A DNA stretch of 64,000 bases from positions 124,001 through 188,000 of the IMG/VR virus record IMGVR_UViG_3300009181_000033; one strand, given 5' to 3'. The notes under the pieces were generated by a model that did no database searches, was not told the origin of the DNA, and was given only the letters and a program-made list of their open reading frames with translations. Below, piece by piece: positions 28,233-51,222 of the stretch (positions are counted from its first letter, which is position 1; the number at the start of each line of letters is the position of its first letter). The translations under genes and the position numbers were made by a program.

Positions 28233-28314
28233 GTAATAATAGTAAACAACTTAACAAGATATTTGCACTCACAAAAACAAATAACTCTTCTTGGATTATA
28301 GTTAATAATTGAGT

Positions 28315-29490: not shown

Positions 29491-29503
29491 ACAGGAGTGC
29501 AAA

Positions 29504-30823: not shown

Positions 30824-30859
30824 AAACCAAATATATATTTTATAATATCAAGAGGAACA

Positions 30860-32794
30860 ATGAGCCTAAAAGAATCACTTCTCCAACAAATACAACAAAA
30901 CAGAACAAAGTCAGAGTCTGAAAAGAAATTTTCTGGAACGCTTATGGATTACGTCGACCAGGTCGAAAAGGATCCCAGCATAGTCAAAACAGCTCACCAA
31001 AGACTAAATGAATCCATTAATGAGCATGGCTCATACGTCATGCCAGACTCAGATTCAAGAAAATACAAGGTATTTGATGGAGAATCCGTCAAAATCTATA
31101 AATACTTTGAAAATGAATTCTTCGGAATGGAGAATGTTGTTTCAAAGGTCATGAGCTTCCTCAATTCAGCAGCTCATCGTGGTGAAGAATCACGTCAAGT
31201 TCTCCTCTTCATGGGCCCTGTTGGCGCCGGCAAGTCCGCCCTAACAGAGCACATCAAGAAAGCACTGGAAGGTAAAAAATTCTATCACCTCAAGGGAGAC
31301 CCTCACCGTGGCGAACCCCTTCAGTTGATTCCACGTTCTCTTAGGGACTCATTTGAAAAACAATTGGGTGTTAAAATCGAAGGAGATATTTCGCCGATTG
31401 CTCGTCACAAGCTCCTCAATGACTACTCCGGACACTACGAAAATTTCGAGGTTGAGGAATCATCTGTGTCACAAAGGGCTCGCAGAGGCATCGGTGTCGT
31501 TCCTCCTATGGACGCCAACAGCCAAGATGTTTCTGTTCTAATCGGTTCTGTTGACATCAGCAAGCTGGACAAATACCCTGAGGATGACCCCCGTGCACTC
31601 TCGCTAACAGGCGCCTTTAACGTTGGCAACCGTGGTATCGTTGAGCTCGTCGAGGTCTTCAAGAATGAAATTGAGTTCCTCCACACCATCATCACAGCCA
31701 CACAAGAGAAGAGAGTTCCATCACCTGGAAAGAGCGACATGCTTCACTTCGATGGGGTCATTATCGCTCACTGTAATGAGGCTGAGTGGGTGAAATTCCA
31801 AGGCGAACACACCAACGAAGCTATCCTCGATCGTATCGTTAAAATCTCAGTGCCTTACTGTCTCGAGCTCAATCAGGAGCAGAAGATCTATGAGAAGATG
31901 TTGGGCAAGTCTGATTTTAAGGCTCACATTGCACCCCACACACTCAAGATAGCTTCCATGTTCTCGGTTATGAGTCGTCTTAAGCCTTCTTCTAAATGCG
32001 ACGCCCTCACCAAAATGAAGATCTATAATGGCGAAGACATTATTGAGAAGGGTCGAGTCAAGAAGGTCGATATTAAGGATCTTCGTGAAGAGGCAAAGCA
32101 TGAAGGCATGGACGGAATTTCAACCCGTTTCATCACCAAGGCAATCGATCACGCCCTGTCGAACTCCGACAAGAACATGGTTACTCCGATATCAATGCTT
32201 GACTCTTTGACTAGAATGGTAAAGGAGCAGATTACAGACGAAGCCTTCAAGAAATCTTGTCTCGAGCTTCTTCAGAAAACTGTTCGCGATGAATATCTCA
32301 AAATTTTGGAGACAGAGGTTTCCAAGGCATTCGTCAATGCATATGAAGAGCAGGCACAGAGCCTTTTCGACAACTATCTTGATCACGCCGAGGCTTATAC
32401 CACACGATGCAAACTAAAGGATCGTGTCACCAAGGAAGAACGTCATCCTGACGAGGAATTCATGAAGTCCATCGAGGAACAGATCGGCATCACAGGCTCT
32501 TCACGTGATGGCTTCCGTTCAGATGTCACAGCATACATGTTTGCCAAGATGCGCAAGGGCGAGAAGGTTGATTACACGACCTATGAGCCATTGAAGGAAG
32601 CAATCGAAGCTTATCTCATTAGCTCTGTGAAGTCGCTTGCTCGTATCGTCACCAAGTCCAAGAGCCGTGACAAAGAGCAGCAAGAGAAGTACTCTGAGAT
32701 GGTCAATACCTTGTGCAAGAAATACAATTACAATCCTGATTCAGCCGAAGAAATATTGGTGTTCTGCGCCAACAATCTCTTTAGAGATAGCTGA
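30860..32794 (+). CDS. prkA: PrkA/YeaG AAA+ serine kinase family protein
   Basis: EFFGME, GPVGAGKS, GNRGIVELVEVFK, NEAILDRI, EGMDGISTRF. Confidence 0.93.
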   Translation: MSLKESLLQQIQQNRTKSESEKKFSGTLMDYVDQVEKDPSIVKTAHQRLNESINEHGSYVMPDSDSRKYKVFDGESVKIYKYFENEFFGMENVVSKVMSFLNSAAHRGEESRQVLLFMGPVGAGKSALTEHIKKALEGKKFYHLKGDPHRGEPLQLIPRSLRDSFEKQLGVKIEGDISPIARHKLLNDYSGHYENFEVEESSVSQRARRGIGVVPPMDANSQDVSVLIGSVDISKLDKYPEDDPRALSLTGAFNVGNRGIVELVEVFKNEIEFLHTIITATQEKRVPSPGKSDMLHFDGVIIAHCNEAEWVKFQGEHTNEAILDRIVKISVPYCLELNQEQKIYEKMLGKSDFKAHIAPHTLKIASMFSVMSRLKPSSKCDALTKMKIYNGEDIIEKGRVKKVDIKDLREEAKHEGMDGISTRFITKAIDHALSNSDKNMVTPISMLDSLTRMVKEQITDEAFKKSCLELLQKTVRDEYLKILETEVSKAFVNAYEEQAQSLFDNYLDHAEAYTTRCKLKDRVTKEERHPDEEFMKSIEEQIGITGSSRDGFRSDVTAYMFAKMRKGEKVDYTTYEPLKEAIEAYLISSVKSLARIVTKSKSRDKEQQEKYSEMVNTLCKKYNYNPDSAEEILVFCANNLFRDS

Positions 32795-37923: not shown

Positions 37924-38340
37924 ATGAAAATTGTTAAAGAGATATTTAAGGCCATAGTTCAAGAAGGTATCGAACTCGAACTGAATGGGGAGCTTGACAA
38001 TTACGAACTGAATACTGAAGCCATAGAAAATGAATACTATAGCGAAATCCTAAGAGAAGCCGAATACAAAGGAAGAGATGTTCCGTTGGGAAAGCCTATG
38101 AGGGGAGACGTAAAAAAATACAAAGTTTATGTAAAAGACCCTAAAACTGGCAACGTCAAGAAAGTAAATTTCGGAGATCCAAACGCCGAAATAAAGAGAG
38201 ACGACCCAGAACGTCGCAAGAATTTCAGGGCCAGGCATGGATGCGGGACGAAAAGAGCTTCCAATAGAACGAAAGCTGCCTATTGGTCGTGTCGACTATG
38301 GTCGAGGAAACCTGTTTCTAAAATCATGAAGGGGGAATAA
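37924..38340 (+). CDS. Conserved phage protein (DUF6321-like basic domain) with an acidic N-terminal leader
   Basis: LREAEYKG, KKYKVYVKDPKTGNVKKVNFGD, RRKNFRARHGC, AYWSC. Confidence 0.7.
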   Translation: MKIVKEIFKAIVQEGIELELNGELDNYELNTEAIENEYYSEILREAEYKGRDVPLGKPMRGDVKKYKVYVKDPKTGNVKKVNFGDPNAEIKRDDPERRKNFRARHGCGTKRASNRTKAAYWSCRLWSRKPVSKIMKGE

Positions 38341-39169
38341 CGTCACCAAACAAATGATCAAACGTGGCAATAAACTTTTGCCATGTGCCATCCTTTGTCA
38401 TGGACTGAAAACCATAAGAGTCAAAAAGATCTTTTACTTTGGACCAGTTGCGCTCTGGAGAAGAAGATGTCATTTCGATCCTATCTTCGTCCGACCAAGT
38501 CATAAACTTAATCAAGTCATAGTTACGTTCGAACTGTACAGCATGCTCTGGATTGGCTAGGAAAGAAGCCAACTTGCCAGGATCCATGCATAGCTCCTCG
38601 GCTGTCTTGTCGCCGATGCCGGGGATGCCAGGAATATTGTCCGAAGTATCACCGCGCAAGGCCTTCCAGGTCACATAATCGTACTCCTCAGGAGCCTCTA
38701 GATATTTCTTTTTAATTGGATTCCATACTTTTACGTGTGGATATTCCTGAACTACCTGAGTGAAATCCGTGTCATTAGAAACGACAATCCAAGGAGCGGC
38801 CGTTGAACTGCAATTGATGAGATTGTAGATGGTGTCGTCGCACTCAGAAGTGGGGTGACGAACAACCGAAACAGGAAACACGGTGGAGAGAAGATCAACA
38901 ATCTGATCTTTTTGCTTGAAGAACCTTTGCAGCTCCTCGTACTTCGGATCATCCTTTTCAACCTTGCGTGTTGCCTTGTACTCTGCCAGCTTTTCGTATC
39001 GATTGACCGGTCGACCCTCGAGGACAACATAGATTCGACTAGGCTTAAATTCATCGATCGTCGACTTGAACTGACGGAAGAAGTTGAAAACAACAGGAGC
39101 AGGACCCATCTGAAAACCACTGCGAGCCCTATGACACTGATTCATGAAGTCCAAACAGAGGATTGTCAT
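38324..39169 (-). CDS. 5'-3' exonuclease/flap endonuclease (T4 RNase H-like)
   Basis: CLDFMN, YKATR, ECDD, SNDTDF, LRGDTSDNIPGIPGIGDKTA. Confidence 0.93.
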   Translation of the reverse strand: MTILCLDFMNQCHRARSGFQMGPAPVVFNFFRQFKSTIDEFKPSRIYVVLEGRPVNRYEKLAEYKATRKVEKDDPKYEELQRFFKQKDQIVDLLSTVFPVSVVRHPTSECDDTIYNLINCSSTAAPWIVVSNDTDFTQVVQEYPHVKVWNPIKKKYLEAPEEYDYVTWKALRGDTSDNIPGIPGIGDKTAEELCMDPGKLASFLANPEHAVQFERNYDLIKFMTWSDEDRIEMTSSSPERNWSKVKDLFDSYGFQSMTKDGTWQKFIATFDHLFGDVIPPS

Positions 39170-40148: not shown

Positions 40149-40775
40149 AGATTCGAGCTTCTCGACCCCCGCGATAACCTTCTGCTGAACATCGCTTTCA
40201 ATCGCCTTAATATCTTCAACGGTGAGGATGCTGCCTGTCTTCCTATCGTGCAAGATGATTGCGGATTTCTCAACCGCTGAAGAATAACGACCAAGGAGAC
40301 CATCGGCTGCCCTTTCCGACAAGACTCCATAATTGCTAATCTTCATGTTTGACAATAGCACGGTGTCCTGTCTGGCATCCAGGATCTCGGATGCCGGAAC
40401 AATCAAATCCTCTTTCTTTACTCCACGGAGAAGTGCTCCGGAGCAATGATCCCACAGAAGAGACTTGGTGATTTTCTTGGACCACGGATGCTCGCAGTGC
40501 GGATTTTTGGCCGGTGTCATTGTCACCTCAGAAGATCTCCAGCGACATCGATCAAATCTCTTGGAAGGACCACGATGGCCATACTCAGCCGGCCCTTGAA
40601 CGAGGGCAATGACAGCACGCTTATAAGCCTCCGTCGCCGCTGTCTCTGTAACGTTGGATGGTCTGTTGAGGTGTGACTCAATTAAGCACAACCAAATCCA
40701 GGTTGTTGACCTGAGAACATCGTAATATTCTTCAGTTCGGTAATCGACCCAGTCGCTATCGGAAAGCAATTTCAT
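40125..40775 (-). CDS. Hypothetical protein
   Basis: 216-aa ORF coupled to the PolX gene; the CEHP motif is only weakly HNH-like. Confidence 0.55.
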   Translation of the reverse strand: MKLLSDSDWVDYRTEEYYDVLRSTTWIWLCLIESHLNRPSNVTETAATEAYKRAVIALVQGPAEYGHRGPSKRFDRCRWRSSEVTMTPAKNPHCEHPWSKKITKSLLWDHCSGALLRGVKKEDLIVPASEILDARQDTVLLSNMKISNYGVLSERAADGLLGRYSSAVEKSAIILHDRKTGSILTVEDIKAIESDVQQKVIAGVEKLESLGKIKEK

Positions 40776-41356
40776 TAATTCCTCACGTACTTCTTAATAA
40801 CATTCTTGGACGTACGAATCTCGGGTGGGACGAAATCCATCTCGAGGATGTCGAAAAAATCCTGCTCCTCGGGCACCCACAGCTGTTCTCCTGTTGGCAT
40901 CGTCGGCATGCAATCAGTCATGCGGCCGCCACCTGACAATTTCTTGAATCGACCAAAAATTCCTGGCACAAAACCATTGAACGAGTTGCCTTCGGCATCA
41001 GACCCGGAGCCTGTGCGCATCATGTATAGCCCGCCCCAGTTCTCAGGGGAAGCCATGAATAGATCAAGGTTCATGCCTTCACTGAGACGAACACGAATGT
41101 ACTTGGCCGCAAGCTTGGGGATCCAAGGCACAGTACCTGGAACACCTGGCTTAATATGCTGACCGACCTCTGTTAGGAGACGGATTAGCTTTTCACGATC
41201 ATCGGAGATGCCTACCAGCTCGATGTCGCCTACGATTGGCTTTTGTCTGCGAATAGAACCTGCAATCTCCACTCTAGTCATTGCAGACGAAATATGGTTC
41301 TTCACCTTAATGGCGATGGCTTGGGCTTCGACCAGATCGATTTTTCCGATTCCCAT
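40775..41356 (-). CDS. Minimal DNA polymerase X/beta-family nucleotidyltransferase
   Basis: IAGSIRR, GDIE, LDLF, RTGS, EEQDFF...VPPEIR; no lyase or PHP domain. Confidence 0.85.
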   Translation of the reverse strand: MGIGKIDLVEAQAIAIKVKNHISSAMTRVEIAGSIRRQKPIVGDIELVGISDDREKLIRLLTEVGQHIKPGVPGTVPWIPKLAAKYIRVRLSEGMNLDLFMASPENWGGLYMMRTGSGSDAEGNSFNGFVPGIFGRFKKLSGGGRMTDCMPTMPTGEQLWVPEEQDFFDILEMDFVPPEIRTSKNVIKKYVRN

Positions 41357-41412
41357 GTATTAAACATACACAGCTCAGTGACGGGTTTGCACCGGTGGCA
41401 TATAATTAATTC

Positions 41413-42324
41413 ATGCACAAAAAAATTTCGAGTCAAAATCTAAGAAAATTGATCAGAGAAATCATTGAGGAAGAAACGGCAATTCCCGGTGATGCCCCTT
41501 CTGAAAACCAAGTTCATCTTTTTGACTTTGATGATACACTTGCTGTAACACAGGATCCCACAGCTGTAATGCTCTACAATGATGAAATCCCTGCACATAA
41601 ATCGGCAGACGAAGTCATAAATTGGCTGACACAATTTAAAATATCTGATGATGATCTAATAAACCCAGGCATTGCGCAAATACCGCAGAGGGGTGGACAC
41701 GCTGCATATATTAATTCGGCAGCTTTGGCTAAAATACAGACAGCCTATAATAGAAGCCAACAAAAGGTCAGCGGAATAAGTGAACCCAAACAAGGTGAAT
41801 CTATATTAATGGACTTTACACCATGTGCATCAACAAACCTCGATGCAGCCAAACCAATAGATTCAACTATTGAAAAAATGAAGAGAATGCAAGATGTAGG
41901 AGCAACAACAGGTGTAGTGACAGCAAGAAAAGAAAAAGGAAGTGGAATCGATCTTCATGGACACAAGGTTGATGCCACCAACAAAGAAGACATAATTAAA
42001 TTTCTTGCACAAAATGGCGTAAGCCCCAGTGCTGGCGTCATGGGTGTCTCTGGACAAAATAAAGGAAATTTCATTGCGAAATATTTTGCCGGCGACAAGA
42101 ACACAAAGGAAATACACTTTTACGATGATATGCCTAAAAACACTTCAGAAGTTGAACAAGCGCTAGCAGAGAAAACTCCTTCGGAATTATTCATATATGG
42201 ACCAGGTGAATTCGACAAAGGAGAAGCAAATCCAAATGTTCCTTCAAAGAGTCATCCTGCTAAAAAGCAAAAGTTCGAAAATTTTGATTTATCGAGATGG
42301 AATAAATTGGCCGGACTAAAATGA
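41413..42324 (+). CDS. HAD-superfamily phosphatase-like protein with N-terminal tag
   Basis: FDFDDTL, VTAR, K, FYDD; N-terminal NLRKLIREIIEE; C-terminal RWNKLAGL. Confidence 0.75.
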   Translation: MHKKISSQNLRKLIREIIEEETAIPGDAPSENQVHLFDFDDTLAVTQDPTAVMLYNDEIPAHKSADEVINWLTQFKISDDDLINPGIAQIPQRGGHAAYINSAALAKIQTAYNRSQQKVSGISEPKQGESILMDFTPCASTNLDAAKPIDSTIEKMKRMQDVGATTGVVTARKEKGSGIDLHGHKVDATNKEDIIKFLAQNGVSPSAGVMGVSGQNKGNFIAKYFAGDKNTKEIHFYDDMPKNTSEVEQALAEKTPSELFIYGPGEFDKGEANPNVPSKSHPAKKQKFENFDLSRWNKLAGLK

Positions 42325-42346
42325 GAAACCCCCTTTCGGGGGTTTC
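42325..42346. terminator. Terminator hairpin between convergent genes
   Basis: gaaaccccc-tttc-gggggtttc. Confidence 0.8.
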
Positions 42347-42348
42347 AT

Positions 42349-42783
42349 TTATATTGAAGGCAATTTTATCTTTGCAACTGTTCCATCTGACATCATCACT
42401 GTAGTGACATCTTCAGGCAATTCCTTTGTAATTGTGGTGTTAGGTTCAAAATCAGGAAGATCCTCTATTGACTGTGGTTCTGAAATTTCGGTCAAAGAAT
42501 ACCATTCTTTGGATTTTGTAACTGCAATATCCATTAGTCTATTAACATGCTTGATCGCTCTATCAATTAATGTTTTTCTAGCCTTGTCAGAAGAATCAAA
42601 TATTTCTCCGTCGACTTGATCCAGCATTACAGTCGATGTTCTATCTGATCCGCCTTGCAACAGGTATTGCACTTCTTCGCCTTTAAGCGTTTTCTTGGTA
42701 ATTATTTCTATTACCTGCATCGGATAAATTTGATTCTTTTTGTTTAGAACAATGAAAAGAACTTGTCCAATTGAGTATCTCAC
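42349..42783 (-). CDS. Hypothetical protein
   Basis: 144-aa ORF (YSIGQVLF). Confidence 0.6.
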   Translation of the reverse strand: MRYSIGQVLFIVLNKKNQIYPMQVIEIITKKTLKGEEVQYLLQGGSDRTSTVMLDQVDGEIFDSSDKARKTLIDRAIKHVNRLMDIAVTKSKEWYSLTEISEPQSIEDLPDFEPNTTITKELPEDVTTVMMSDGTVAKIKLPSI

Positions 42784-43142
42784 TTTTGTTCTCCAGCGTC
42801 ATTGCCCAAAAAACTTGAACTTTGTTCATCTTCGTCGTCTGATGGCTCAGAAGCCAATTGAAAAACACTGATAGGAGGAGGTCCAGAGGGTGCCACAATG
42901 AAATCTGGTGCATCCTCATTCATGGGAATGCTGGCCAATTCACAGGCGTCAGAAATCTTGTTCCACAAGAGCGTTTCTGTCATTGATCTATTTTCAACTT
43001 CAGCAAGAGATTGACTTAGTGTTTTCTTGCCTTCCGGAGGCAGAACCACACCGAATAAATCCCTAAGGTGAACTAGTTCAAACTTTGTTAGCCTTAGTTC
43101 GAAAGTTTTTCTTTTCTTAAGGAAAGGTTGTTTATCACTCAT
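42780..43142 (-). CDS. Hypothetical protein
   Basis: 120-aa ORF in operon. Confidence 0.6.
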   Translation of the reverse strand: MSDKQPFLKKRKTFELRLTKFELVHLRDLFGVVLPPEGKKTLSQSLAEVENRSMTETLLWNKISDACELASIPMNEDAPDFIVAPSGPPPISVFQLASEPSDDEDEQSSSFLGNDAGEQK

Positions 43143-43156
43143 GTTCTATTCTCACT

Positions 43157-43444
43157 TCAAGAAGTTGGATCAATTGCTTCCAGGAATAAATCAAATGTAT
43201 CTCGGTGTGCAACACCTTGCTGAATCTTAACAACCTTAAGAGCGGCTTGCAACGTTTTCATGTCAAGTCGATCCTGATATTCTTCAATGATTTCTTTTCT
43301 ATCTGTTTTTAGGAGCTCGATCTCATTATCAACTGTTTCAATCTTTCCAATGAACTCCTTCACAAGACCTCTAAGGGTATTGATCTCATCAGGCTGCATA
43401 TCAGCGGTATTGTATTGCTTCTTGGGTGGTGCTTTCTTTGGCAT
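43157..43444 (-). CDS. DsbA/GapR-like double-stranded DNA-binding protein
   Basis: FIGKIETVDNEIELLKTDRKEIIEE...LDMKTLQAALK helical pattern. Confidence 0.6.
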   Translation of the reverse strand: MPKKAPPKKQYNTADMQPDEINTLRGLVKEFIGKIETVDNEIELLKTDRKEIIEEYQDRLDMKTLQAALKVVKIQQGVAHRDTFDLFLEAIDPTS

Positions 43445-43476
43445 GTTGATATTCTAAACCGCCAAGTTTGAAAAGT

Positions 43477-44556
43477 TCAAAGCGCCTTTATTTTTTGTAT
43501 TGTCGACCTGTAGTCTTTAACATATTGAGCATCTTCAGGGACGCCTTGCTTCAAGACTTCCTGCACTTTGTCTTCGAGTGATTTTATGTAAAATTGCTTC
43601 ATAGAAGCACGAATAGTTTTCATAATGCTCTTTTCTGCTTCTTGTTTTTCTTTGCCTTCAAGCTCAGAAAGCTTCTTAATTTCAGGTATTTCCTTCTTGT
43701 TTTTCTTCATCAAATTCTGAAGATCCTGGGGAGATTTTGCATTCTTTAAAACGCCTTCTGCTTGATTGTAAATTTGATCCAAGCTTTTTCTATAAATTTC
43801 CGTGGCGGTCTTCTTCATTTTTTCAGCCTCGGGGCTTGAATAGACTTTCGTCAAAAATTTTGGATTCTTCATCAATTTTTGTGGCGTAAATCCACCTTTT
43901 TGATTTTTTTCATTGGAGTCATCCTCTGTGATTTGTTGAGATTCTCCCCACAAATCACTTGGGTTACGACTCTTGCCACCTGATTCCCGAGAAGTCTTTT
44001 TAGGAGCCTTGGCACCTTTGTTGCCTAACATCCACCTTCCTGTTTTTTGCAACTTTTCTTTTGTGGCGTCATATAATTGGTCAGAAAATCCACCGGTTGT
44101 TGCACTCAAAAGACTCTTTGCGACTTTGGGTGCAGCCTTTGCCGTAAAGGCACCCATGACAAGTGCTGGTGAAGCCATAAAGGCTAGCGCCACAGCGTCT
44201 CCCTTAAACGCCTCATCATTTCTTTTATAAACTTCTGAATAATCATTTCTTATCTTGTTGATCTCTTCTTTTTCTTCATCAAAAACGCCGGCATAATCGG
44301 CCCTCAACATGGGATTGAGGGTCGTCACAATTGTTCCCCAAACAACTTTTACTAGAGTTTTGGCACGCGTTGTAAGCTCCTTCGTTTTACCTATAGCAGT
44401 TTGCACTGCATCAACAAATGGAGATCCAAATACCTTAAAAAGATCCCCTTGATAAGAAGAACCCATCATTCCTGCTGTATCCATTGGGCCATAGTCATCT
44501 TCTTTTAAGATGTGTTGAACATATTCCTTCAACAATATTTCGCCAGATTTTTTCAT
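43477..44556 (-). CDS. Hypothetical helical protein with N-terminal tag
   Basis: LLKEYVQHILKED; ATATTTA 5 nt upstream. Confidence 0.7.
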   Translation of the reverse strand: MKKSGEILLKEYVQHILKEDDYGPMDTAGMMGSSYQGDLFKVFGSPFVDAVQTAIGKTKELTTRAKTLVKVVWGTIVTTLNPMLRADYAGVFDEEKEEINKIRNDYSEVYKRNDEAFKGDAVALAFMASPALVMGAFTAKAAPKVAKSLLSATTGGFSDQLYDATKEKLQKTGRWMLGNKGAKAPKKTSRESGGKSRNPSDLWGESQQITEDDSNEKNQKGGFTPQKLMKNPKFLTKVYSSPEAEKMKKTATEIYRKSLDQIYNQAEGVLKNAKSPQDLQNLMKKNKKEIPEIKKLSELEGKEKQEAEKSIMKTIRASMKQFYIKSLEDKVQEVLKQGVPEDAQYVKDYRSTIQKIKAL

Positions 44557-44593
44557 AGCTCTAAATATCTCTCTAACTACATAATTATACTTT

Positions 44594-45190
44594 ATGTCAA
44601 CAACAATAGCTCTGCTTCCAGGAAGTTTTAAACCTTATCACGCCGGACACGATGGACTAGTAAGACTCGCAGCATCAGAATGTGACGAAGTACATCTCTT
44701 TATATCAACATCCGATAGAAGTCGCAAAGGGGAAATGACCATATATGGAACAGACATGCAAAGAATATGGCTTGATTTTATAGAGCCAACGTTACCCGAA
44801 AATGTTGTTGTCGAATACGGTGGAGCTCCTGTTCAAAAAGTGTATGCAGAGCTAGAAGAGGCCGAAGCTGCCGCAAGCGAAGACACTTATGTAATCTACT
44901 CAGACGAAGAAGACATACTGAAATACACAGATGCAGCTCTCACCAAAGTCGCACCAACACTGTTCGAAAATGGACAAATAGAAAGAAGGCCTGTCTCAAG
45001 AACAGAAACAGTCCCAGTCAGCGGTACCAAAATGAGAGAATACCTGGCGACAGGCGACTCAAAAAACTTCGCCAAATTCTTGTCGCCAAGTATTCGTCAA
45101 TACTCTCAGCAAATAATAGACATTCTAACTCGGAAGCAAATAGGAGAAAGTCTATTAAAAAGATACATCAAGGAATTCATCCAACTCTAA
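44594..45190 (+). CDS. HxGH (cytidylyltransferase-like) nucleotidyltransferase with C-terminal tag
   Basis: PGSFKPYHAGH, VSGTKMRE; ends ESLLKRYIKEFI. Confidence 0.82.
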   Translation: MSTTIALLPGSFKPYHAGHDGLVRLAASECDEVHLFISTSDRSRKGEMTIYGTDMQRIWLDFIEPTLPENVVVEYGGAPVQKVYAELEEAEAAASEDTYVIYSDEEDILKYTDAALTKVAPTLFENGQIERRPVSRTETVPVSGTKMREYLATGDSKNFAKFLSPSIRQYSQQIIDILTRKQIGESLLKRYIKEFIQL

Positions 45191-46340
45191 TATTGACTTG
45201 GTTTGGAACAATTTTTCCTTGAGTGTTTCTGACTTCGACAACATATCTGCCCTTTGTGGTCAAAATTCTACAAGAAATTTGTTTCGTGGTTCCTGGATAA
45301 GATATGTCTATTCTCTTCACCACACCAACTAATTCCAGGGCATGTTCTTGATTTTCAATTTTTTCTACATGCCATTTACCGCCACCCATGTCTCTAGCGT
45401 ACCAATATCCGTAACCATAACCAGAAGCTAAATATCTCTGGACTTTTTCGTAATCCTGTGTGCCAGATGGGGCAACGTCCTTGCTCATCTCAGGGTCTTT
45501 GCTTGAGAAACGAGAAGCAGGAGTCTTAGTCACTGAGGATGGTGTACCACGCAAGTAATTAGTTAGACCTCTGGCTGCCAAAGTTTTGTTGATGCCTAGA
45601 GCTCTTAAAAAATCGTCAGTTGGATGTGAACCTGACTTAACGATAGGTTCTCCGGTTTTTTTATCTTCATCCTGAACAAATCCACCTACATAACCTGTAT
45701 TGGCAAAAGTATTACCTGAGGGATCCTTCAGGGAGATAAAAACCTTTTTACCAGATTCAGCATTTCCAGCCGAGTCTGGTCTTTTTAAAATAAGTGTTAG
45801 GTCGGAAATTATTGGACCAACATTCGGCACTTCAGGGAGCAAAGGCCTTGCATTGTTCTTGCCCCCTGTTTGTTCTGAATCCTTAATGTTATTCGGATTG
45901 ATTCCGATCGCCTTTAAAAGGCTAGCTATTCTGGGAGAGATCTTTCCTGATTTCAGATCCTGTGCTTCACTTGCAACCTCATCTTCGAAAACCTGTCCTT
46001 TGTTTCTGCCGCTGGTGAATAGAACATTGTATTGTTTTCCTCCATGGTTCACGATATATGTCGTAAATCTTCCACTCAAGGAACCTGGATCACCTTTGGG
46101 AATGGAATCCAATAGCTTAATTCTTGCCTTCTTCAAAATCTTGGCAATCTCTTCACCAGAAAAAAGGTGTGACGTAGAAGGAGCTAGTCTTATCTCTTTG
46201 TCAGAAGCGACCTTTACCTGAAGGCCTTCAACACCTGAGTCTGCTGCGGCTGAAACTATCAAATTAGCAACCAACACAGTATCAGGTGATTTCGCCTCCT
46301 TTATGAAGTTCCTGATATATTGCTTCAATAGATCATTCAT
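45177..46340 (-). CDS. Putative PD-(D/E)xK-like nuclease-fold protein with N-terminal tag
   Basis: KGQVFE...ISDLTL...FISLK; starts MNDLLKQYIRNFIKEA. Confidence 0.5.
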   Translation of the reverse strand: MNDLLKQYIRNFIKEAKSPDTVLVANLIVSAAADSGVEGLQVKVASDKEIRLAPSTSHLFSGEEIAKILKKARIKLLDSIPKGDPGSLSGRFTTYIVNHGGKQYNVLFTSGRNKGQVFEDEVASEAQDLKSGKISPRIASLLKAIGINPNNIKDSEQTGGKNNARPLLPEVPNVGPIISDLTLILKRPDSAGNAESGKKVFISLKDPSGNTFANTGYVGGFVQDEDKKTGEPIVKSGSHPTDDFLRALGINKTLAARGLTNYLRGTPSSVTKTPASRFSSKDPEMSKDVAPSGTQDYEKVQRYLASGYGYGYWYARDMGGGKWHVEKIENQEHALELVGVVKRIDISYPGTTKQISCRILTTKGRYVVEVRNTQGKIVPNQVNIRVG

Positions 46341-47599
46341 ATCTTTATCCCTTTTCTTCCATACTTGAACAACCCCAAAATTTGATTGGCGGCCGCAAAT
46401 GAACCCGTAAATTTATACGCATTTCCTTTATAGATGAACACAACTCCTTCCATGGGCGAAGTTATGTTGCTCACGTCCTTGAGCTTTTCCATTTGTTGTT
46501 TGAGGATGGACATGGCACCTTCATTACCGCTAGCTTCGATAGCGTTGATTGCTGTCTGAACCTCACTTCGCAACCTGGAGACCTCGCGATCAGAATCATC
46601 AATCAGGGTTGAGTTAAGGCCTTTCAAGAGCTCAACAGCAAAATCGTTGATAGCTATCTCTATTGGCATCACGTACTGCTTGAACAAGGCTCCAGCGCCC
46701 TTGACAAAATCCGATATGGTTTTATGCAATGATTTATCTGCAGCTTTTTTAATGTCAACCACGGTCGGTGCATCAGACTCTTCAAACACTCTTGCCATCA
46801 ACATATTGGCTACCTTAGGCGGAAGACCGAGAGCATCAACGTCAGCTCTTATCAAGAGCCTCAAATAGTCACCTATCGTATCCGAATCACCCACTCCGGC
46901 AGAAGCGGCTGCCTCGTCAATCTTGGCAGCCGTTGTTGTGAAAATGGTGCCATTAGAAAGATTATTCATTCGGATGAGCGAAGGACCTTTGACTCTCCAG
47001 CCTGTCTGAGAAATCGAGGCTTGCATTCTATCGATGTATTGTGCTAGTGTATCAACACCATCAACCTCATCTTCTGACATCTCAACACTGCCTGTATTCG
47101 TTCTTTTGAAAACGGGCCAACCATGAAAAACGATATTATTAGAATCGTAATTTATGACGTTTGGATTTTTTGTGTATATAACCTCGATTGAATACCATCG
47201 ATCAACTGATGGACCAAAGATCTTTTCTTTGACTTTTTTTGGCAATGAACCTACAGCGCCTTGTAATACCTTGAAGGCATTAGTAAAAGCTTCTTCTACT
47301 GATCCTCTTCCAGCAAATTTTGCTGCCAATGCCGTAGCATCCATGCCGCCCTTGCTGACATCTGAACCCCTTGTGACTCTAATTTCTTCAGAAGATATAT
47401 CATAAGAAAAAACAAGATTCATGCCATCCATTTTTTCTGACACTTTTTCAAGACGACCAGTCGCAGCTCTTCTTAAGATCTTTTTAATTTCACCAAATGT
47501 TAAATCCCTATTGTCATAGAGATGCATGAGGTGACCTACTAGGCCCCCGCATACCAAAAGCTGTTTATTCAACAAGGTGGTGGGAGATGATAAAATCAT
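46337..47599 (-). CDS. DUF6267-like protein with ATP-dependent ligase-type motifs
   Basis: GHLMHLYD, EKMDG (KxDG), EGVVF, YKFTGSF. Confidence 0.6.
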   Translation of the reverse strand: MILSSPTTLLNKQLLVCGGLVGHLMHLYDNRDLTFGEIKKILRRAATGRLEKVSEKMDGMNLVFSYDISSEEIRVTRGSDVSKGGMDATALAAKFAGRGSVEEAFTNAFKVLQGAVGSLPKKVKEKIFGPSVDRWYSIEVIYTKNPNVINYDSNNIVFHGWPVFKRTNTGSVEMSEDEVDGVDTLAQYIDRMQASISQTGWRVKGPSLIRMNNLSNGTIFTTTAAKIDEAAASAGVGDSDTIGDYLRLLIRADVDALGLPPKVANMLMARVFEESDAPTVVDIKKAADKSLHKTISDFVKGAGALFKQYVMPIEIAINDFAVELLKGLNSTLIDDSDREVSRLRSEVQTAINAIEASGNEGAMSILKQQMEKLKDVSNITSPMEGVVFIYKGNAYKFTGSFAAANQILGLFKYGRKGIKI

Positions 47600-47868
47600 T
47601 TTTGTTTCTCGTTAATCTGTTGTCTATTTTTTGCTGACTGCAGCTCTCTCTTTAAGTGATTTACCAAATGCTTATAATGAGATCTTTTTTCGGTCCCACG
47701 CGCACATTTATCACGCCAATACTCTGCATCACCGATTCTTGATTGTAAATCATCTATATGGTCTGTAGAACCCCAATCAGTCGTTCTGTCTTTAGACAAA
47801 GAAACCTGACGAACCTGTCTTTCAACCAACAGCTTGATGTAATTTTTAATTAGATTTATGCCTTCCAT
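47596..47868 (-). CDS. Hypothetical protein with N-terminal tag
   Basis: MEGINLIKNYIKLLVER. Confidence 0.6.
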   Translation of the reverse strand: MEGINLIKNYIKLLVERQVRQVSLSKDRTTDWGSTDHIDDLQSRIGDAEYWRDKCARGTEKRSHYKHLVNHLKRELQSAKNRQQINEKQK

Positions 47869-48064
47869 CTTCTTGCTCCAAAGCATTTTTCATAGAACCA
47901 ACAAGAAATTTCTTTATGTGACTCTCGGTGATCTCGCCAGAAGAAGACAGGGAGAAAGCATTTTTTACTTGTTCAAGAAATTCTTGTGACATGGAAAGTT
48001 CAACTTCTTCACCAGAAGGAAGATTGAATTTCATGCTATTTGCTATTTTCATATTGACACTCAT
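47846..48064 (-). CDS. Hypothetical protein
   Basis: 72-aa ORF overlapping its neighbours. Confidence 0.5.
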   Translation of the reverse strand: MSVNMKIANSMKFNLPSGEEVELSMSQEFLEQVKNAFSLSSSGEITESHIKKFLVGSMKNALEQEDGRHKSN

Positions 48065-48667: not shown

Positions 48668-49069
48668 TCACTTTTTAATTAAATCCATGCCTAACATGCA
48701 CAACTTGTTGTGCATATCAATGCCAAATAATTTGGGCGATGTTAAAAAGTAAGGACCAATTATTCGATTTATTTTTTCTGATAGGTGCAACTGGATGCCG
48801 TTGCACAATAAATCTGCTCCGGATGTTATCAAAATGAATATTTCATAAGCTTCTTCAAGTTTAAGCTTAACGTCCAATTTAATTGATTGTTTTTCTACCT
48901 GTATTCCATCGAGAGTACCAATTAATGGCTCTAGGCCATTAATTTCAATTACAGTAATCACTACAGAATCCATTGAAGTCAAAGTTTGTGTAACTTCATC
49001 TTCAAGCTCTGGTATCATCCCCTTTAATGAATCGCTCATTAACAGCCTATTTGTCGTTGAATCAATCAT
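48668..49069 (-). CDS. Hypothetical protein
   Basis: 133-aa ORF with ATGA overlap. Confidence 0.55.
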   Translation of the reverse strand: MIDSTTNRLLMSDSLKGMIPELEDEVTQTLTSMDSVVITVIEINGLEPLIGTLDGIQVEKQSIKLDVKLKLEEAYEIFILITSGADLLCNGIQLHLSEKINRIIGPYFLTSPKLFGIDMHNKLCMLGMDLIKK

Positions 49070-49443
49070 GCTGATACACTGTACACTACATCCTTATACA
49101 GTGTATCAGCATGCTTCGCATATTCCTTATCTAATTCGGTTATCTGGTCTACATCCTTCGTGTAAACATCCAACACCACTTCATTCTCATTAATCGTTAT
49201 GGTGGCATTGTGCATCGTCTCATCTTCGTATTTTAAGAGAGATCTCACAAAATCATTTCTTAAATCTTGATTAAGAAATTGAAATTTCTTTCTGAGGCGG
49301 CGGGGCGACTCTATTTTTTCCCATTTGTTGACGGCCATAATGGGAACATCTTTTTCACGCGGCAAGACTGGCAGTGCCCCAAAATTCATTGGCCTCCTTG
49401 CTTTGTCGATAAACTCTTCGTGTAGACGAGAAAGCTGCTTCAT
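49066..49443 (-). CDS. Pterin-4a-carbinolamine dehydratase (PCD/DCoH)-like protein
   Basis: W...LRKKFQF...HNATITI...YTKDVDQITELDKEYA; catalytic histidines partly lost. Confidence 0.65.
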   Translation of the reverse strand: MKQLSRLHEEFIDKARRPMNFGALPVLPREKDVPIMAVNKWEKIESPRRLRKKFQFLNQDLRNDFVRSLLKYEDETMHNATITINENEVVLDVYTKDVDQITELDKEYAKHADTLYKDVVYSVSA

Positions 49444-50204
49444 AAAAGAACGTAACCTCCCACTACAGCTGCCTCAGTAAATGATGAGCCATTCGTCCAA
49501 ACGTTCCTGTTTCTATCTACGATGCAAGAGCCGCCTTTGAACTCCAGATCTCTCTCCTTGCCAACCCTATTCGAGACAACGACGTTCGCGTCTGTTTCTT
49601 CTGCTAGTTCAACCCATGATGAATCAGGATAGCCATAATCACTGCCCCAATTCGTCAATAGGGCTATTGTGTCGACAGAGCCATTTTTATAAAACCTCTG
49701 TTCATTCTTATAGAATTTATAACTATCTCTATAGTTGTTCATGACATCCCTACAAATCAACACACCTGTTCTTCCTGCTTTGGTGATTATAACAGGGTGC
49801 ATTGCCTCTGATGAAGTCGCCCATAAATTATCGGATCCCCACAGGTTGTGCTTCTGGCAATTCTCAACAAGGCCACTTGGTCCAACAATGGCAGCTGAAT
49901 TAAACAATTGATCTCCACGTTGTTCAACATAGCCAAAGACTATGTGGGTGTTAAATTTCTTTGCTATAGGGGCAAAAACTTCGGTTTGATAACCGTTTTT
50001 CTCCTGTGCACAAGAAGCTGCTTCTCTTTTGTTTTCCAAGACATAACCACTGATGCATAGTTCTGGAAGAACAACCAAACATGCGCCTTTAGCTGCAGCT
50101 TCGAAAGCCATTTGTTGTGCTGTTTTTAAATTTGCATATACGTCCAGGATCTTTGGCTGAAACTGGACTGCTGCAACGATAGGCGCATTTTGCATTTCAA
50201 TCAC
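49440..50204 (-). CDS. Carbon-nitrogen hydrolase (nitrilase superfamily)
   Basis: Triad LPEL, QKHNL, LICRD; SNRVG, FKGGS. Confidence 0.9.
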   Translation of the reverse strand: MIEMQNAPIVAAVQFQPKILDVYANLKTAQQMAFEAAAKGACLVVLPELCISGYVLENKREAASCAQEKNGYQTEVFAPIAKKFNTHIVFGYVEQRGDQLFNSAAIVGPSGLVENCQKHNLWGSDNLWATSSEAMHPVIITKAGRTGVLICRDVMNNYRDSYKFYKNEQRFYKNGSVDTIALLTNWGSDYGYPDSSWVELAEETDANVVVSNRVGKERDLEFKGGSCIVDRNRNVWTNGSSFTEAAVVGGYVLL

Positions 50205-51222
50205 CTTCTATGGGGTTAATAACCTTCTGACCTGATCTTTGAGTTTTCTTCAAGTACTTGTCAAAGAAGACACGGAAGGTGTCCAATTCCGTTACCATCT
50301 CGGGATGGTCCTTCATGAGTTGCACATCAGCAGCTGTAAGCTCACCAGAGCTGCTAAATTCCTTGATATATTCGTTCATGGCAGTCAGAAACAATATTTC
50401 TTTCTCGTCAGGGTCCATTTCTATAAGATATCGTGCCTTCGCCAGAGCATTATCGATGAACTGCTGAAGCTTACCGTGCGACTTGAGACCGAGCTCGGTT
50501 GCAATTGCAGGAATCGAGGCACCACCAACGTCAGACATCGTCACGTTCCTCTTGGGTACAAGGCTTGGATTTGCAGCAAGAGCTTCATCCAAAGCCATGG
50601 CTGCCTCGGGATCTATCTCTTCAACAACTTCGATTGCTGATCTAATTGTCGCCAATCTATCACCAGCAAATCTTGTCAATTTAGAAACGAGCAATTTGAG
50701 GAATTCTTCAGGTTGGTCTTTTATGTCGAGGACATCAAATGTCTTCATGGCTAAGGCAACTATCTTTTCAGCCATATCAACATCACCGTCACTGCCATAA
50801 GAAGCACCTGAATAGCTGAGACCAGTGTCAGTATGGGCACCTGCAGCTTCACTTAATAATTTCCTGATGGTTTTTCTTATGACTTCTTCAATCTTTTGAT
50901 CTTCCTTGTTTTTCATTTTCTTTTCCTCACTGTCGTCATTTAAATCGGCAATAGAATTTTTTATTGAATCGTAAACCTTTGAAGCATCATCATCAGAAAT
51001 ATCTTGAACAATAGAAGACAACGCAGTGTTCAATTCAATCCTATTTCTTGGCTTGAAATTTGGATTGCCTGGATTTGTGATGGCTTCAGAAGGATCAACA
51101 ACATCTGAAATAGATGTAGGCAATTGATCATGCTCGGCTTTTTTCCAGCCCATCGGGGCTGGATTGTCAAGCATTTCCTTGATAAATTGCCTCAGCGCCT
51201 TTTTAGCAACTACTATCTTCAT
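50197..51222 (-). CDS. Hypothetical protein with two copies of the amphipathic tag
   Basis: ALRQFIKEML and VIRKTIRKLLSEA. Confidence 0.7.
   Translation of the reverse strand: MKIVVAKKALRQFIKEMLDNPAPMGWKKAEHDQLPTSISDVVDPSEAITNPGNPNFKPRNRIELNTALSSIVQDISDDDASKVYDSIKNSIADLNDDSEEKKMKNKEDQKIEEVIRKTIRKLLSEAAGAHTDTGLSYSGASYGSDGDVDMAEKIVALAMKTFDVLDIKDQPEEFLKLLVSKLTRFAGDRLATIRSAIEVVEEIDPEAAMALDEALAANPSLVPKRNVTMSDVGGASIPAIATELGLKSHGKLQQFIDNALAKARYLIEMDPDEKEILFLTAMNEYIKEFSSSGELTAADVQLMKDHPEMVTELDTFRVFFDKYLKKTQRSGQKVINPIEGD

What the first reader, a model, noticed from the sequence alone, without database searches (positions are those of the whole stretch)
41413..47599. Tagged enzyme cluster: HAD phosphatase, HxGH nucleotidyltransferase, nuclease-like and ligase-like proteins
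Seen within 6 kb: a DxDxT HAD protein, an HAGH nucleotidyltransferase, a PD-(D/E)xK-like protein (all three tagged) and an EKxDG/EGVV ligase-motif protein. Established: phosphatase plus ligase is the logic of T4 Pnk/Rnl1 RNA repair, and HxGH enzymes include NMN adenylyltransferases. Inference: this could be a virion-delivered counter-defence kit for nucleic-acid end healing/sealing or nucleotide-cofactor rescue, active before phage genes are expressed.
Basis: inference. Interest (0 to 1): 0.6.

Follow-up and report, generated by a model that had tools for sequence, protein, structure and literature searches.

The report
Tagged enzyme cargo of a jumbo phage
A 298-kb T4-related jumbo phage encodes a phosphatase, an adenylyltransferase-type enzyme, a restriction-endonuclease-like protein and an RNA-ligase-fold enzyme that carry short end tags also found on its head-assembly proteins, so they are probably loaded into the capsid, but what they do to nucleic acids or cofactors is still unknown.

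Summary
All four motif-bearing ORFs are real, conserved genes of a complete 297,894-bp T4-type jumbo phage.

- **HAD (303 aa):** all four HAD motifs are invariant.
- **HxGH enzyme (198 aa):** HxGH and SGTxMR are conserved.
- **387-aa protein:** a HinP1I/MspI-like endonuclease domain behind a degenerate Pol-beta-like domain.
- **420-aa protein:** models as an RNA-ligase-type fold with invariant KxDG, SxE and EGxVF. It is a remote structural relative of Pfam DUF6267.

The tags are real. They sit at protein termini, are conserved in orthologues and recur in the head-gene module. The genome encodes a T4 gp21-type prohead protease. The HAD C-terminus (RWNKLAGLK) copies the C-terminus of the protein encoded just upstream of the capsid gene, here and in two cultured relatives.

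The ligase-like protein gets its tag from a separate 96-aa ORF just outside the given range, which is fused to it in relatives. The HxGH enzyme and the ligase-like domain are fused in both orders in many phages, and cyanophage homologues of the HxGH enzyme were found in virions by mass spectrometry.

The Pnk/Rnl1 "repair kit" reading is not supported. The HAD gene is a stand-alone insertion absent from relatives, has a large cap-sized insert, and no kinase is present. Packaging and function remain inferred.

The parts
41378..41406 (+). Promoter-like site directly upstream of the HAD gene
   Evidence: GTGACG-17-TATAAT, 10 of 12 matches. The number of such sites in the region is not above chance, so only its position is notable.
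41413..42324 (+). HAD-superfamily phosphatase, 303 aa, with an N-terminal and a C-terminal tag. It is a stand-alone cassette.
   Evidence: All four HAD motifs are invariant. DUF2608 scores 22.7 bits and phrog_415 gives E 4e-7. There are 60 family clusters in 1.84 billion proteins. The gene is absent from L003-L005.
41440..41475 (+). N-terminal helix tag of the HAD protein (residues 10-21, LRKLIREIIEEE)
   Evidence: PSSM and leave-one-out scores. The same tag type occurs in HAD homologues at either terminus.
42292..42321 (+). C-terminal RWxKLAG tag of the HAD protein (residues 294-303)
   Evidence: The same C-terminal motif ends the 689-aa protein upstream of the capsid gene, a 327-aa head-module protein, and the scaffold-position proteins of Mel-JY01 and Flavobacterium phage immuto.
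42325..42346 (.). Bidirectional hairpin terminator after the HAD gene
   Evidence: Nine-pair stem with 6 G-C pairs, followed by a T-rich tail on both strands.
43477..44556 (-). Tagged 359-aa Lys/Glu-rich protein of unknown fold (tag at residues 8-19, nt 44500-44535)
   Evidence: Tag score 22-23. The proteins at the same position in L003 and L004 keep the tag. No family hit.
44594..45190 (+). HxGH nucleotidyltransferase, 198 aa, with a C-terminal tag (residues 187-198, nt 45152-45187)
   Evidence: Family hits. There are 222 homologues, and the C-terminal tag is kept in most of them. It is fused to the ligase-like domain in many phages.
45177..46340 (-). Two-domain 387-aa protein. It has an N-terminal tag (residues 4-15, nt 46296-46331), a degenerate Pol-beta-like domain (about residues 17-111) and a HinP1I/MspI-like PD-(D/E)xK endonuclease domain (residues 112-387).
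   Evidence: D180 is nearly invariant and K205 is invariant.
46337..47599 (-). Ligase-like lysine nucleotidyltransferase, 420 aa, with a helical insert at about residues 215-375. It is a remote DUF6267 relative.
47596..47886 (-). Tagged 96-aa module (tag at residues 12-22, nt 47821-47853). Its stop codon overlaps the ligase-like start codon (ATGA). It is fused to the ligase-like protein in relatives.
   Evidence: P0012, P0015, P0041 and P0069 are single polypeptides of about 500 aa. A separate adaptor ORF lies upstream in 27 of 80 loci.
50197..51222 (-). Tagged 341-aa protein in the same gene block (context)
   Evidence: Tag score 21.6. The orthologues in L003-L005 keep a tag-like N-terminus.
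40775..41356 (-). Untagged mini Pol X-like nucleotidyltransferase, 193 aa (context only; its link to the cluster is uncertain)
   Evidence: Weak DNA_pol_B palm and thumb hits and a PolX NCBIfam hit. It is 71-73% identical in L003-L005.

Best explanation
The region is part of a block of genes for tagged 'cargo' proteins of a distant T4-type jumbo phage.

Two short peptide motifs act as position-independent address labels. One is an amphipathic helix of the type L-(L/R)-K-x-(Y/F/L)-I-x-x-h-h-x-E. The other is the peptide RWxKLAG(I/L). Both are shared with proteins of the head-assembly module. The second is the conserved C-terminus of the scaffold-position protein. The inferred steps are these: the tags dock the enzymes to the scaffolding core or inner capsid during prohead assembly, the gp21-type protease cuts after the Glu of the helix tag, and the enzymes stay in the head and enter the host with the DNA.

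The cargo encoded in and next to the given range is:
- an RNA-ligase-fold lysine nucleotidyltransferase, tagged in trans by a split-off 96-aa N-terminal module;
- its obligate partner, an HxGH (NMNAT/PPAT-like) nucleotidyltransferase;
- a HinP1I-like endonuclease;
- a capped HAD phosphatase, which is a lineage-specific add-on.

What is shown: the gene identities and folds, the tags with their terminal position and conservation, the sharing of tags with head-module proteins, and the ligase-NTase fusions. What is inferred: packaging, cleavage, injection, and that the ligase/NTase pair adenylylates or seals nucleic-acid ends early in infection.
For: Genome context:
- The record is a complete 297,894-bp virus with direct terminal repeats.
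- It has a gp23-type capsid protein, a portal, a terminase and a PF03420 prohead protease at 87.8 bits.

Tags:
- They are restricted to termini and exceed shuffles.
- They are conserved in orthologues of the nuclease, adaptor, NTase and 359-aa proteins.
- The same helix tag starts five small proteins between terminase and capsid gene.
- RWxKLAG ends the protein upstream of the capsid gene in this genome, in Mel-JY01 and in Flavobacterium phage immuto, and it ends the HAD protein.
- In 47 HAD-family representatives this motif is C-terminal in 11, N-terminal in 5 and interior in 0.
- T4 IPII and IPIII begin MKTYQEFIAE|A. In T4, residues 4 and 7 target the protein and residues 8 and 10 direct cleavage. 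The cyanophage S-SZBM1 cytidylyltransferase begins MRFRQFIIEA.

Virion mass spectrometry: the cytidylyltransferase was detected in S-SZBM1 and S-CREM2 virions. The S-SZBM1 gene lies next to a DUF6267 gene (E 3.7e-130).

Ligase fold:
- The top 11 VIA hits are all ATP-dependent RNA ligases, with Z 6.3-7.8 over 182-215 aligned residues.
- The top 3 Foldseek PDB hits are T4 Rnl1 structures, and RNA ligases are 10 of the first 15 rows shown.
- K56, D58, G59, S137, E139, Y142, E384, G385, K391 and K396 are invariant.

Coupling:
- The NTase-ligase order is found in Mel-JY01 and LR756508.
- The ligase-NTase order is found in 39 of 80 IMG/VR loci.
- Atlas and BFVD fusion clusters include S-PM2.
Against: - No proteomic or cleavage data exist for this phage or a close relative.
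- The cyanophage proteomics authors themselves warn of possible carry-over of abundant proteins.
- The NTase tag is C-terminal and would not be removed in the T4 manner.
- In long fusion proteins the helix tag also lies internally, so it may be a structural or linker element as much as an address.
- The ligase assignment rests on a middling Z. The tool notes that a best Z of 7-8 is common. There is no sequence-profile link to any known ligase family.
- The complex prediction of adaptor with ligase gave no verdict.
- Substrates are unknown.
Confidence: 0.5

Rival explanations
1. The tags are not capsid addresses. They are docking helices that assemble a cytoplasmic multi-enzyme complex, or they are simply a shared structural or linker element. 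On this reading the enzymes act in the infected cell after normal expression.
For: The helix tag occurs internally and in tandem in long ligase-NTase fusion proteins and at the start of a conserved downstream protein family. The NTase tag is C-terminal. The tagged enzyme genes lie about 80 kb from the head module.
Against: The second tag is the conserved C-terminus of scaffold-position proteins in three distant phages. Small proteins of the head module carry the helix tag. The tag ends in a gp21-type h-x-E site. Cyanophage homologues were found in virions.
Confidence: 0.2
2. This is a DNA-end or nick-processing set for the phage genome. A site-specific endonuclease or nickase, the ligase-like sealer, the nearby mini Pol X-like enzyme and the 5'-3' exonuclease would process or repair nicks, gaps or termini of the packaged or injected DNA.
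For: The nuclease has a HinP1I/MspI fold. The ligase-like and nuclease genes are adjacent on one strand. A ligase-like protein is fused to a different PD-(D/E)xK-like neighbour in L024. Some relatives carry a Pol-beta-like signature (GS...DxD, read by eye) in the C-terminal extension of the ligase-like protein. A Pol X-like gene lies at 40775-41356, and an ORF at 38324-39169 was taken by reading alone for a 5'-3' exonuclease. It was not scanned.
Against: The HinP1I-like gene accompanies the ligase-like gene in only 6 of 80 loci. The nearest solved folds are RNA ligases, not DNA ligases. The Pol X-like protein is untagged. The Pol-beta reading of the L022 extension got no support from BLASTP or Pfam.
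Confidence: 0.15
3. This is a T4 Pnk/Rnl1-style RNA repair kit against anticodon nucleases. The HAD would heal 3' ends and the ligase-like enzyme would seal tRNA.
For: The nearest folds are RNA ligases, including T4 Rnl1 and Trl1. The HAD hits phrog_415, 'polynucleotide kinase'.
Against: No kinase domain is present. The HAD shares only the DxDxT stretch with T4 Pnk. The HAD has a cap-sized insert of about 127 residues, which by established HAD classification is typical of small-molecule phosphatases. The HAD gene is absent from syntenic relatives and is a self-contained cassette.
Confidence: 0.08
4. This is nucleotide-cofactor (NAD+) rescue. The HxGH enzyme would be an NMN adenylyltransferase that rebuilds NAD+, possibly feeding the ligase-like enzyme as an AMP donor.
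For: The best named hits are NMNAT families (phrog_3462, TIGR01526, MJ0541). Relatives place a NUDIX gene next to the NTase, as in NadM-Nudix enzymes. The S-CREM2 authors call the cyanophage enzyme an NMNAT homologue.
Against: The matches cover only the HxGH region and lie far below the equivalog cut-offs (27.5 against 341 bits). This genome has no Nampt/NAPRTase and no NUDIX gene. The fusion partner is a ligase-fold enzyme, not a salvage enzyme.
Confidence: 0.07

Closest known systems
T4 capsid targeting sequence (CTS) and internal proteins IPI-III/Alt, processed by the gp21 prohead protease
   Same: A short terminal peptide with hydrophobic or aromatic positions ends in (I/L)-x-E. It sits on otherwise unrelated, polymorphic proteins. 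The phage has gp20/21/23-type head genes, and enzymes can be carried as cargo, as Alt is in T4.
   Different: The tag is longer, with a different spacing of its hydrophobic positions. It works at either terminus and in tandem. There is a second tag (RWxKLAG) that copies the scaffold C-terminus. The cargo is a set of nucleic-acid and nucleotide enzymes. Packaging has not been shown here.
CTP_transf_like + DUF6267 gene pair or fusion of T4-like cyanophages (the 'cytidylyltransferase' of S-SZBM1, S-CREM2 and S-PM2)
   Same: An HxGH enzyme is coupled to a KxDG protein that starts with an HLxHL motif. The two are adjacent or fused. The fold matches at TM 0.77-0.88. The cyanophage NTase has a CTS-like N-terminus and was detected in virions.
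   Different: The window's protein does not hit the DUF6267 HMM even at E 10. Here the tag sits on a split-off module and on the NTase C-terminus. The function of the cyanophage pair is also unknown.
ATP-dependent RNA ligases (T4 Rnl1, T4 Rnl2, Trl1 ligase domain, Naegleria Rnl, archaeal Rnl3)
   Same: The nucleotidyltransferase fold is the best match in the PDB. A KxDG lysine motif is followed by SxE and EGxVF/K motifs in the canonical order.
   Different: There is no profile-level similarity. A helical insert of about 160 residues lies between motifs IIIa and IV. An invariant GHLxHLYDN motif lies ahead of motif I. The protein is obligately associated with an HxGH enzyme.
HinP1I and MspI type IIP restriction endonucleases
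   Same: The fold of residues 112-387 matches. There is a conserved Asp and an S-x-K in place of (D/E)-x-K. From my own knowledge, HinP1I and MspI likewise use Q-x-K and N-x-K.
   Different: The protein is tagged, is preceded by a degenerate Pol-beta-like domain, and has no methyltransferase partner in the neighbourhood that was read. Its specificity and activity are unknown.
Encapsulin cargo-loading peptides
   Same: Short, transferable terminal peptides that occur at either end of unrelated enzymes and would bind the inside of an HK97-fold shell or its scaffold. This is an analogy only.
   Different: The sequences are unrelated. This is a phage capsid that also holds DNA. Binding has not been tested.

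Membership tests
Covalent nucleotidyltransferases (ATP-dependent RNA/DNA ligases) | Motif I KxDG with the nucleophilic lysine | tested here: met
   E55, K56, D58 and G59 are invariant in 37 homologues. The motif is aligned to KWDG of a DUF6267 protein.
Covalent nucleotidyltransferases (ATP-dependent RNA/DNA ligases) | Motifs III, IIIa, IV and V in canonical order | tested here: inconclusive
   S137-x-E139-x-x-Y142, F158-H-G-W, E384-G-x-V-F and K391/K396 are invariant and in the right order. They were assigned by inspection, not from a residue-level structural alignment.
Covalent nucleotidyltransferases (ATP-dependent RNA/DNA ligases) | Nucleotidyltransferase domain fold | tested here: met
   The top 11 of 48,161 chains are RNA ligases, with Z 6.3-7.8 over 182-215 aligned residues. 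The Foldseek E-values are weak, 0.075 or worse, so the strength is moderate.
Covalent nucleotidyltransferases (ATP-dependent RNA/DNA ligases) | Sequence-profile membership in a known ligase family | tested here: not met
   There is no Pfam, NCBIfam or PHROG hit. The PDB profile search gave nothing relevant. hhalign against T4 Rnl1 gave nothing.
Covalent nucleotidyltransferases (ATP-dependent RNA/DNA ligases) | Self-adenylylation and strand joining | not testable with these tools
   Needs a biochemical assay.
Pfam DUF6267 | Match to the family HMM | tested here: not met
   There is no hit at E up to 10 for the window protein or four relatives. The S-SZBM1 neighbour hits at 3.7e-130.
Pfam DUF6267 | Shared fold and shared partner (HxGH domain) | tested here: met
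   The Atlas match is TM 0.77/0.80 to a cluster in which 24% of members carry DUF6267. Fusion clusters with CTP_transf_like also match, as do BFVD hits. hhalign gives E 0.0023 over HLxHL...KxDG.
HxGH nucleotidyltransferases (CTP_transf_like superfamily) | HxGH and SxTxxR signatures, and family cut-offs | tested here: met
   H16-A-G-H19 is nearly invariant. In S143-G-T-x-x-R148, S143, G144 and R148 are invariant. Citrate_ly_lig scores 26.7 against a cut-off of 20.9, and TIGR00125 scores 29.7 against 27.7. CTP_transf_like itself scores 18.8, below its cut-off of 21.
NMN adenylyltransferase (NadM/NadR type) | Equivalog-level match over the whole domain | tested here: not met
   The scores are 27.5 against a cut-off of 341 and 21.8 against 181, and only the first 50 or so residues are matched.
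HAD phosphatases | Motifs I-IV (DxDxT, S/T, K, DD) | tested here: met
   D38, D40, D41, T42, T170, K217, D238 and D239 are invariant in 27 sequences.
T4 Pnk-type polynucleotide kinase-phosphatase | P-loop kinase domain plus capless HAD phosphatase domain | tested here: not met
   There is no kinase domain. Only the DxDxT stretch aligns to T4 Pnk. About 127 residues lie between motifs I and II.
PD-(D/E)xK endonucleases of the HinP1I/MspI type | Fold | tested here: met
   Foldseek gives 2fkc_A at E 5e-4 with probability 1.0, and 1sa3 at 5.5e-3. VIA gives 1ynm at Z 7.7 over 174 residues and 1sa3 at Z 6.6 over 167 residues.
PD-(D/E)xK endonucleases of the HinP1I/MspI type | Catalytic Asp ... (x)-x-Lys | tested here: inconclusive
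   D180 is nearly invariant, and S203 (nearly invariant) and K205 (invariant) are conserved. They were assigned by inspection.
T4-type capsid-targeted internal proteins | gp21-family prohead protease in the genome | tested here: met
   PF03420 scores 87.8 bits at G000 256401-256826. phrog_207 gives 2e-49.
T4-type capsid-targeted internal proteins | Short terminal propeptide ending in (L/I)-x-E | tested here: met
   The tags end in IKE|A, LKE|D, LVE|R and IEE(E). This Glu is invariant in the 96-aa adaptor alignment (E22) and is present in most members of the nuclease alignment. Exception: the NTase tag is C-terminal.
T4-type capsid-targeted internal proteins | Presence in virions and cleavage of the tag | not testable with these tools
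   The only evidence is indirect: virion mass spectrometry of distant cyanophage homologues.

The most novel reading that the evidence does not exclude
A widespread clade of aquatic T4-related (jumbo) phages uses a modular two-peptide address code. One peptide is an LRKxIRE-type helix and the other is RWxKLAGI, which mimics the scaffold C-terminus. The code works at either protein end and loads a polymorphic arsenal of enzymes into the capsid. At the core of that arsenal is a previously unrecognised pair, an RNA-ligase-fold enzyme with an HxGH adenylyltransferase (DUF6267 with 'cytidylyltransferase'). This pair would be delivered with the DNA and would modify or seal nucleic-acid ends in the first moments of infection.
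Probability: 0.3. Interest if true: 0.8.

Novelty: new variant of a known kind. Interest (0 to 1): 0.62.

Why it matters
If the tags are capsid addresses, this would extend the T4 capsid-targeting principle in three ways. The code would be position-independent, it would use two motifs, and one of them would work by mimicking the scaffold. That would give a sequence rule for predicting injected proteins in uncultured phages. It would also give new tags for loading foreign proteins into capsids.

The work also gives a first structural reading of DUF6267 as RNA-ligase-like. It shows that the 'cytidylyltransferase' recurring in T4-like cyanophages (from my own recollection listed among their core genes; not checked here) is one half of a conserved two-enzyme module. 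That turns an unexplained gene into a testable biochemical question.

Tried and rejected
- **DNA and protein searches in cultured phages.** DNA similarity of the region to cultured phages found nothing. tblastn of the HAD and of the NTase against phage records found nothing. The IMG/VR pattern search for the HAD found nothing.
- **Sequence links of the ligase-like family to known ligases.** The PDB profile search gave only noise. hhalign against T4 Rnl1 gave nothing. The DUF6267 HMM is not matched by the window family.
- **Complex prediction.** Complex prediction of the 96-aa module with the ligase-like protein gave no verdict (score 0.00). It is not evidence either way.
- **Triple fusion in L037.** My guess that the 1121-aa L037 protein is a ligase + HinP1I-like nuclease + NTase fusion was not supported by hhalign.
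- **C-terminal module of long fusions.** My guess that the window's 341-aa tagged protein is the free form of the C-terminal module of long fusion proteins was not supported. The HMM has no hit in the window's own genome.
- **The 328-aa neighbour in L004.** It shares only the tag with the window's nuclease. It should not have been in alignment A2, though its presence only makes the invariant list more conservative.
- **Pol-beta-like reading of the L022 extension.** It rests on a motif read by eye. BLASTP and Pfam gave no support.
- **Catalytic competence of the nuclease's N-terminal domain.** The Pol-beta-like N-domain lacks the G[GS] and DxD signatures, so it was rejected as a working nucleotidyltransferase.
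- **HAD match to RPA14.** The HAD PDB sequence hit to RPA14 (E 5e-4) was set aside as spurious without further testing, because it runs through the cap-sized insert.

Full report
**Setting.** The window is bases 124001-188000 of a complete 297,894-bp virus record with direct terminal repeats. The phage carries GroEL, a PrkA/SpoVR/DUF444 operon, a GAF-PAS histidine kinase and a carbamoyltransferase. Its head genes are of the T4 type. They include a gp23-family capsid protein, a portal, a large terminase and a gp21-family prohead protease (PF03420, 87.8 bits). The nearest capsid proteins belong to an uncultured 484-kb phage, Flavobacterium phage immuto, Microcystis phage Mel-JY01 and Rhodothermus phage RM378. 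The phage is therefore a distant T4 relative. T4's way of loading internal proteins into the prohead is a legitimate frame for reading it.

**The observation.**
- The HAD protein (41413-42324, +) has DFDDT. All four HAD motifs are invariant across 27 homologues (D38, D40, D41, T42, T170, K217, D238, D239).
- The HxGH enzyme (44594-45190, +) has HAGH and SGTKMR, both conserved. It passes the Citrate_ly_lig and TIGR00125 cut-offs. Its best named neighbours are NMNAT and PPAT, matched only over the HxGH region.
- The 387-aa protein (45177-46340, -) and the 420-aa protein (46337-47599, -) have no curated family. Both belong to conserved metagenomic families.

**The ligase-like protein.** An AlphaFold model built from 37 homologues has pLDDT 82.
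- In an exhaustive structural comparison with 48,161 PDB chains, the best 11 hits are all ATP-dependent RNA ligases. They are Naegleria Rnl, three fungal tRNA-ligase (Trl1) entries, T4 Rnl2 (two entries), trypanosome REL1, archaeal Rnl3-type ligases and T4 Rnl1. Z is 6.3-7.8 over 182-215 residues. DNA ligases and capping enzymes follow.
- Foldseek ranks T4 Rnl1 first, but weakly (E 0.075).
- The invariant residues fall in the order of ligase motifs: K56-x-D-G, S137-x-E139, F158-H-G-W, E384-G-x-V-F, and K391/K396.
- A helical insert of about 160 residues separates motifs IIIa and IV.
- No sequence profile links the family to any known ligase.
- Among predicted structures the fold matches viral clusters at TM 0.75-0.88. 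One cluster carries Pfam DUF6267, and several are fusions with CTP_transf_like.
- In cyanophage S-SZBM1, the gene next to the 'cytidylyltransferase' is a full DUF6267 (E 3.7e-130). It starts with HLEHLEDD...KWDG. hhalign aligns this stretch to the window family's HLMHLYDN...KMDG (E 0.0023).

I therefore read the 420-aa protein as a remote DUF6267 relative with an RNA-ligase-type nucleotidyltransferase fold. Its activity is untested.

**Coupling to the HxGH enzyme.** This is the strongest functional result.
- Mel-JY01 encodes one 639-aa protein with tag, HxxH domain and ligase-like domain in that order. LR756508 has the same fusion.
- Of 80 IMG/VR loci with relatives of the ligase-like protein, 39 encode the opposite order, ligase-like then NTase, in one ORF. 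A further 24 have a separate NTase gene nearby.
- Fusion in both orders, together with adjacency in T4-like cyanophages, shows that the two enzymes work together.
- The chemistry is not known. The NTase could supply or recycle the nucleotide donor, or both enzymes could act on one substrate.

**The nuclease-like protein.** The model has pLDDT 87.5 and two domains behind a detached N-terminal helix.
- Residues 112-387 match HinP1I (Foldseek E 5e-4, probability 1.0; VIA Z 7.7 over 174 residues) and MspI.
- D180 and S203-x-K205 are conserved. This resembles the Q-x-K and N-x-K variants of those two enzymes, which I cite from my own knowledge.
- Residues 1-111 resemble Pol-beta-type nucleotidyltransferases (Z 6-8) but lack their catalytic signatures.
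- T4-like cyanophages hold homologues of the C-terminal domain only.
- This gene follows the ligase-like gene in only 6 of 80 loci. In other relatives that position holds a different tagged protein. In L024 that different protein is fused to the ligase-like protein (BLASTP 7e-13). The position is polymorphic, much like the T4 internal-protein locus.

**The HAD protein.**
- It belongs to a small family of 60 clusters among 1.84 billion proteins.
- It is absent from the otherwise collinear loci L003-L005.
- It has its own promoter-like site and a strong hairpin terminator.
- About 127 residues lie between motifs I and II. By the established HAD classification this points to a capped enzyme that acts on small molecules, not a capless polynucleotide 3'-phosphatase.
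- It shares only DxDxT with T4 Pnk.

**The tags.**
- A helix motif of the type L-(L/R)-K-x-(Y/F/L)-I-x-x-h-h-x-E lies at the N-terminus of the HAD, the 359-aa, the 387-aa, the 96-aa and the 341-aa proteins. It lies at the C-terminus of the NTase.
- A compact pattern gives 8 terminal hits and no interior hits in the genome, far above shuffles.
- Orthologues keep the tags.
- The 96-aa ORF overlaps the ligase-like start by ATGA. It is fused to the ligase-like protein in proteins of about 500 aa from relatives. The ligase-like protein is therefore tagged in trans here.
- Five small proteins between terminase and capsid gene start with the same kind of helix.
- A second motif, RWxKLAG(I/L), ends the HAD protein, a 327-aa head-module protein and the 689-aa protein encoded just upstream of the capsid gene. 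The proteins at that same position in Mel-JY01 and in phage immuto end in the same peptide.
- In HAD homologues both motifs occur at either end, sometimes swapped. The RW motif is C-terminal in 11, N-terminal in 5 and never interior.
- T4 IPII and IPIII begin MKTYQEFIAE|A. In T4, residues 4 and 7 target the protein and residues 8 and 10 direct cleavage, and an Asp at position 10 blocks cleavage without blocking targeting. The tags here end in IKE|A, LKE|D or LVE|R.
- In long fusion proteins of distant relatives the helix motif also stands internally and in tandem, ahead of a conserved acidic module. This fits cleavage of a polyprotein, but it equally fits a structural role.

**Outside evidence.** Purified virions of S-SZBM1 contained the cytidylyltransferase, which begins MRFRQFIIEA, and its neighbour gene product. 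S-CREM2 virions also contained a cytidylyltransferase. Its authors note that such enzymes are frequently found in cyanophage virions, and they caution about carry-over.

**Conclusion.** The enzyme identities and the tags are confirmed. The best reading is a block of capsid-targeted cargo enzymes whose conserved core is a ligase-fold/HxGH pair. The HinP1I-like nuclease and the HAD are variable additions. Packaging, cleavage, injection and substrates are inferences. The Pnk/Rnl1-style repair kit is not supported as a unit. NAD+ rescue and DNA-end processing remain open but weaker alternatives. No reads tool, alternative genetic code or restricted sequence was involved.

Noticed in passing
window 28309-32794 (+): A complete DUF444 / SpoVR / PrkA (YeaH-YcgB-YeaG-like) operon with very strong Pfam matches (E 1e-105 to 1e-137), which is unusual for a phage.
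   Followed up: no
window 21726-23357 (-) and 10046-11635 (-): A phage GroEL (phrog_5725, E 2e-151) and a GAF-PAS histidine kinase.
   Followed up: no
G000 257774-260902 (= L007:13774-16902, -), outside the window: The portal ORF is 1042 aa and contains an HNH endonuclease-like segment (residues about 187-280) ahead of the portal domain (588-852). This could be a mobile insertion or an intein-like element.
   Followed up: no
window 40775-41356 (-): A 193-aa mini Pol X-like protein with a GS...DIE signature, 71-73% identical in relatives. It is comparable in size to the ASFV Pol X chain (5hr9_A, 176 residues) listed.
   Followed up: partly
window 49066-50204 (-): A CN-hydrolase (nitrilase-like) gene and a 125-aa gene are conserved in the same order next to the tagged genes in L003-L005. 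The orthologue of the 125-aa gene in those loci carries Pterin_4a.
   Followed up: no
L003:12703-15704, L004:12224-16339: Relatives carry ClpP, an isocitrate lyase/PEP mutase-family gene, a NUDIX gene and, in L004/L005 only, an FGE-sulfatase gene between the nuclease-position gene and the NTase. This genome lacks them at that place.
   Followed up: no
L035-L090 (for example L071:2114-2851, L039:4194-6824): A conserved family of about 245-330 aa has two tandem helix tags, an STGIN...YFDKF domain and an acidic tail. It is fused to, or encoded directly after, the ligase-NTase gene in 40 loci. It has no hit in the window's own genome.
   Followed up: partly
L092:4731-5972 (Flavobacterium phage immuto) and L091:3184-3411 (Mel-JY01): The immuto protein upstream of the capsid gene is annotated 'DNA polymerase phi-like', but it sits in the scaffold position and ends in SRWQKLAGIIK. 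Mel-JY01 has a ribosomal protein S21 gene inside its head module.
   Followed up: partly
P0271 (570 aa): A HAD homologue is fused to an N-terminal NTP_transf_2 (Pol-beta-type) nucleotidyltransferase domain.
   Followed up: no
window 14833-19941 (-): A 1702-aa ORF spans a stretch of raised G+C (0.507 at 18-20 kb, against about 0.41 elsewhere).
   Followed up: no
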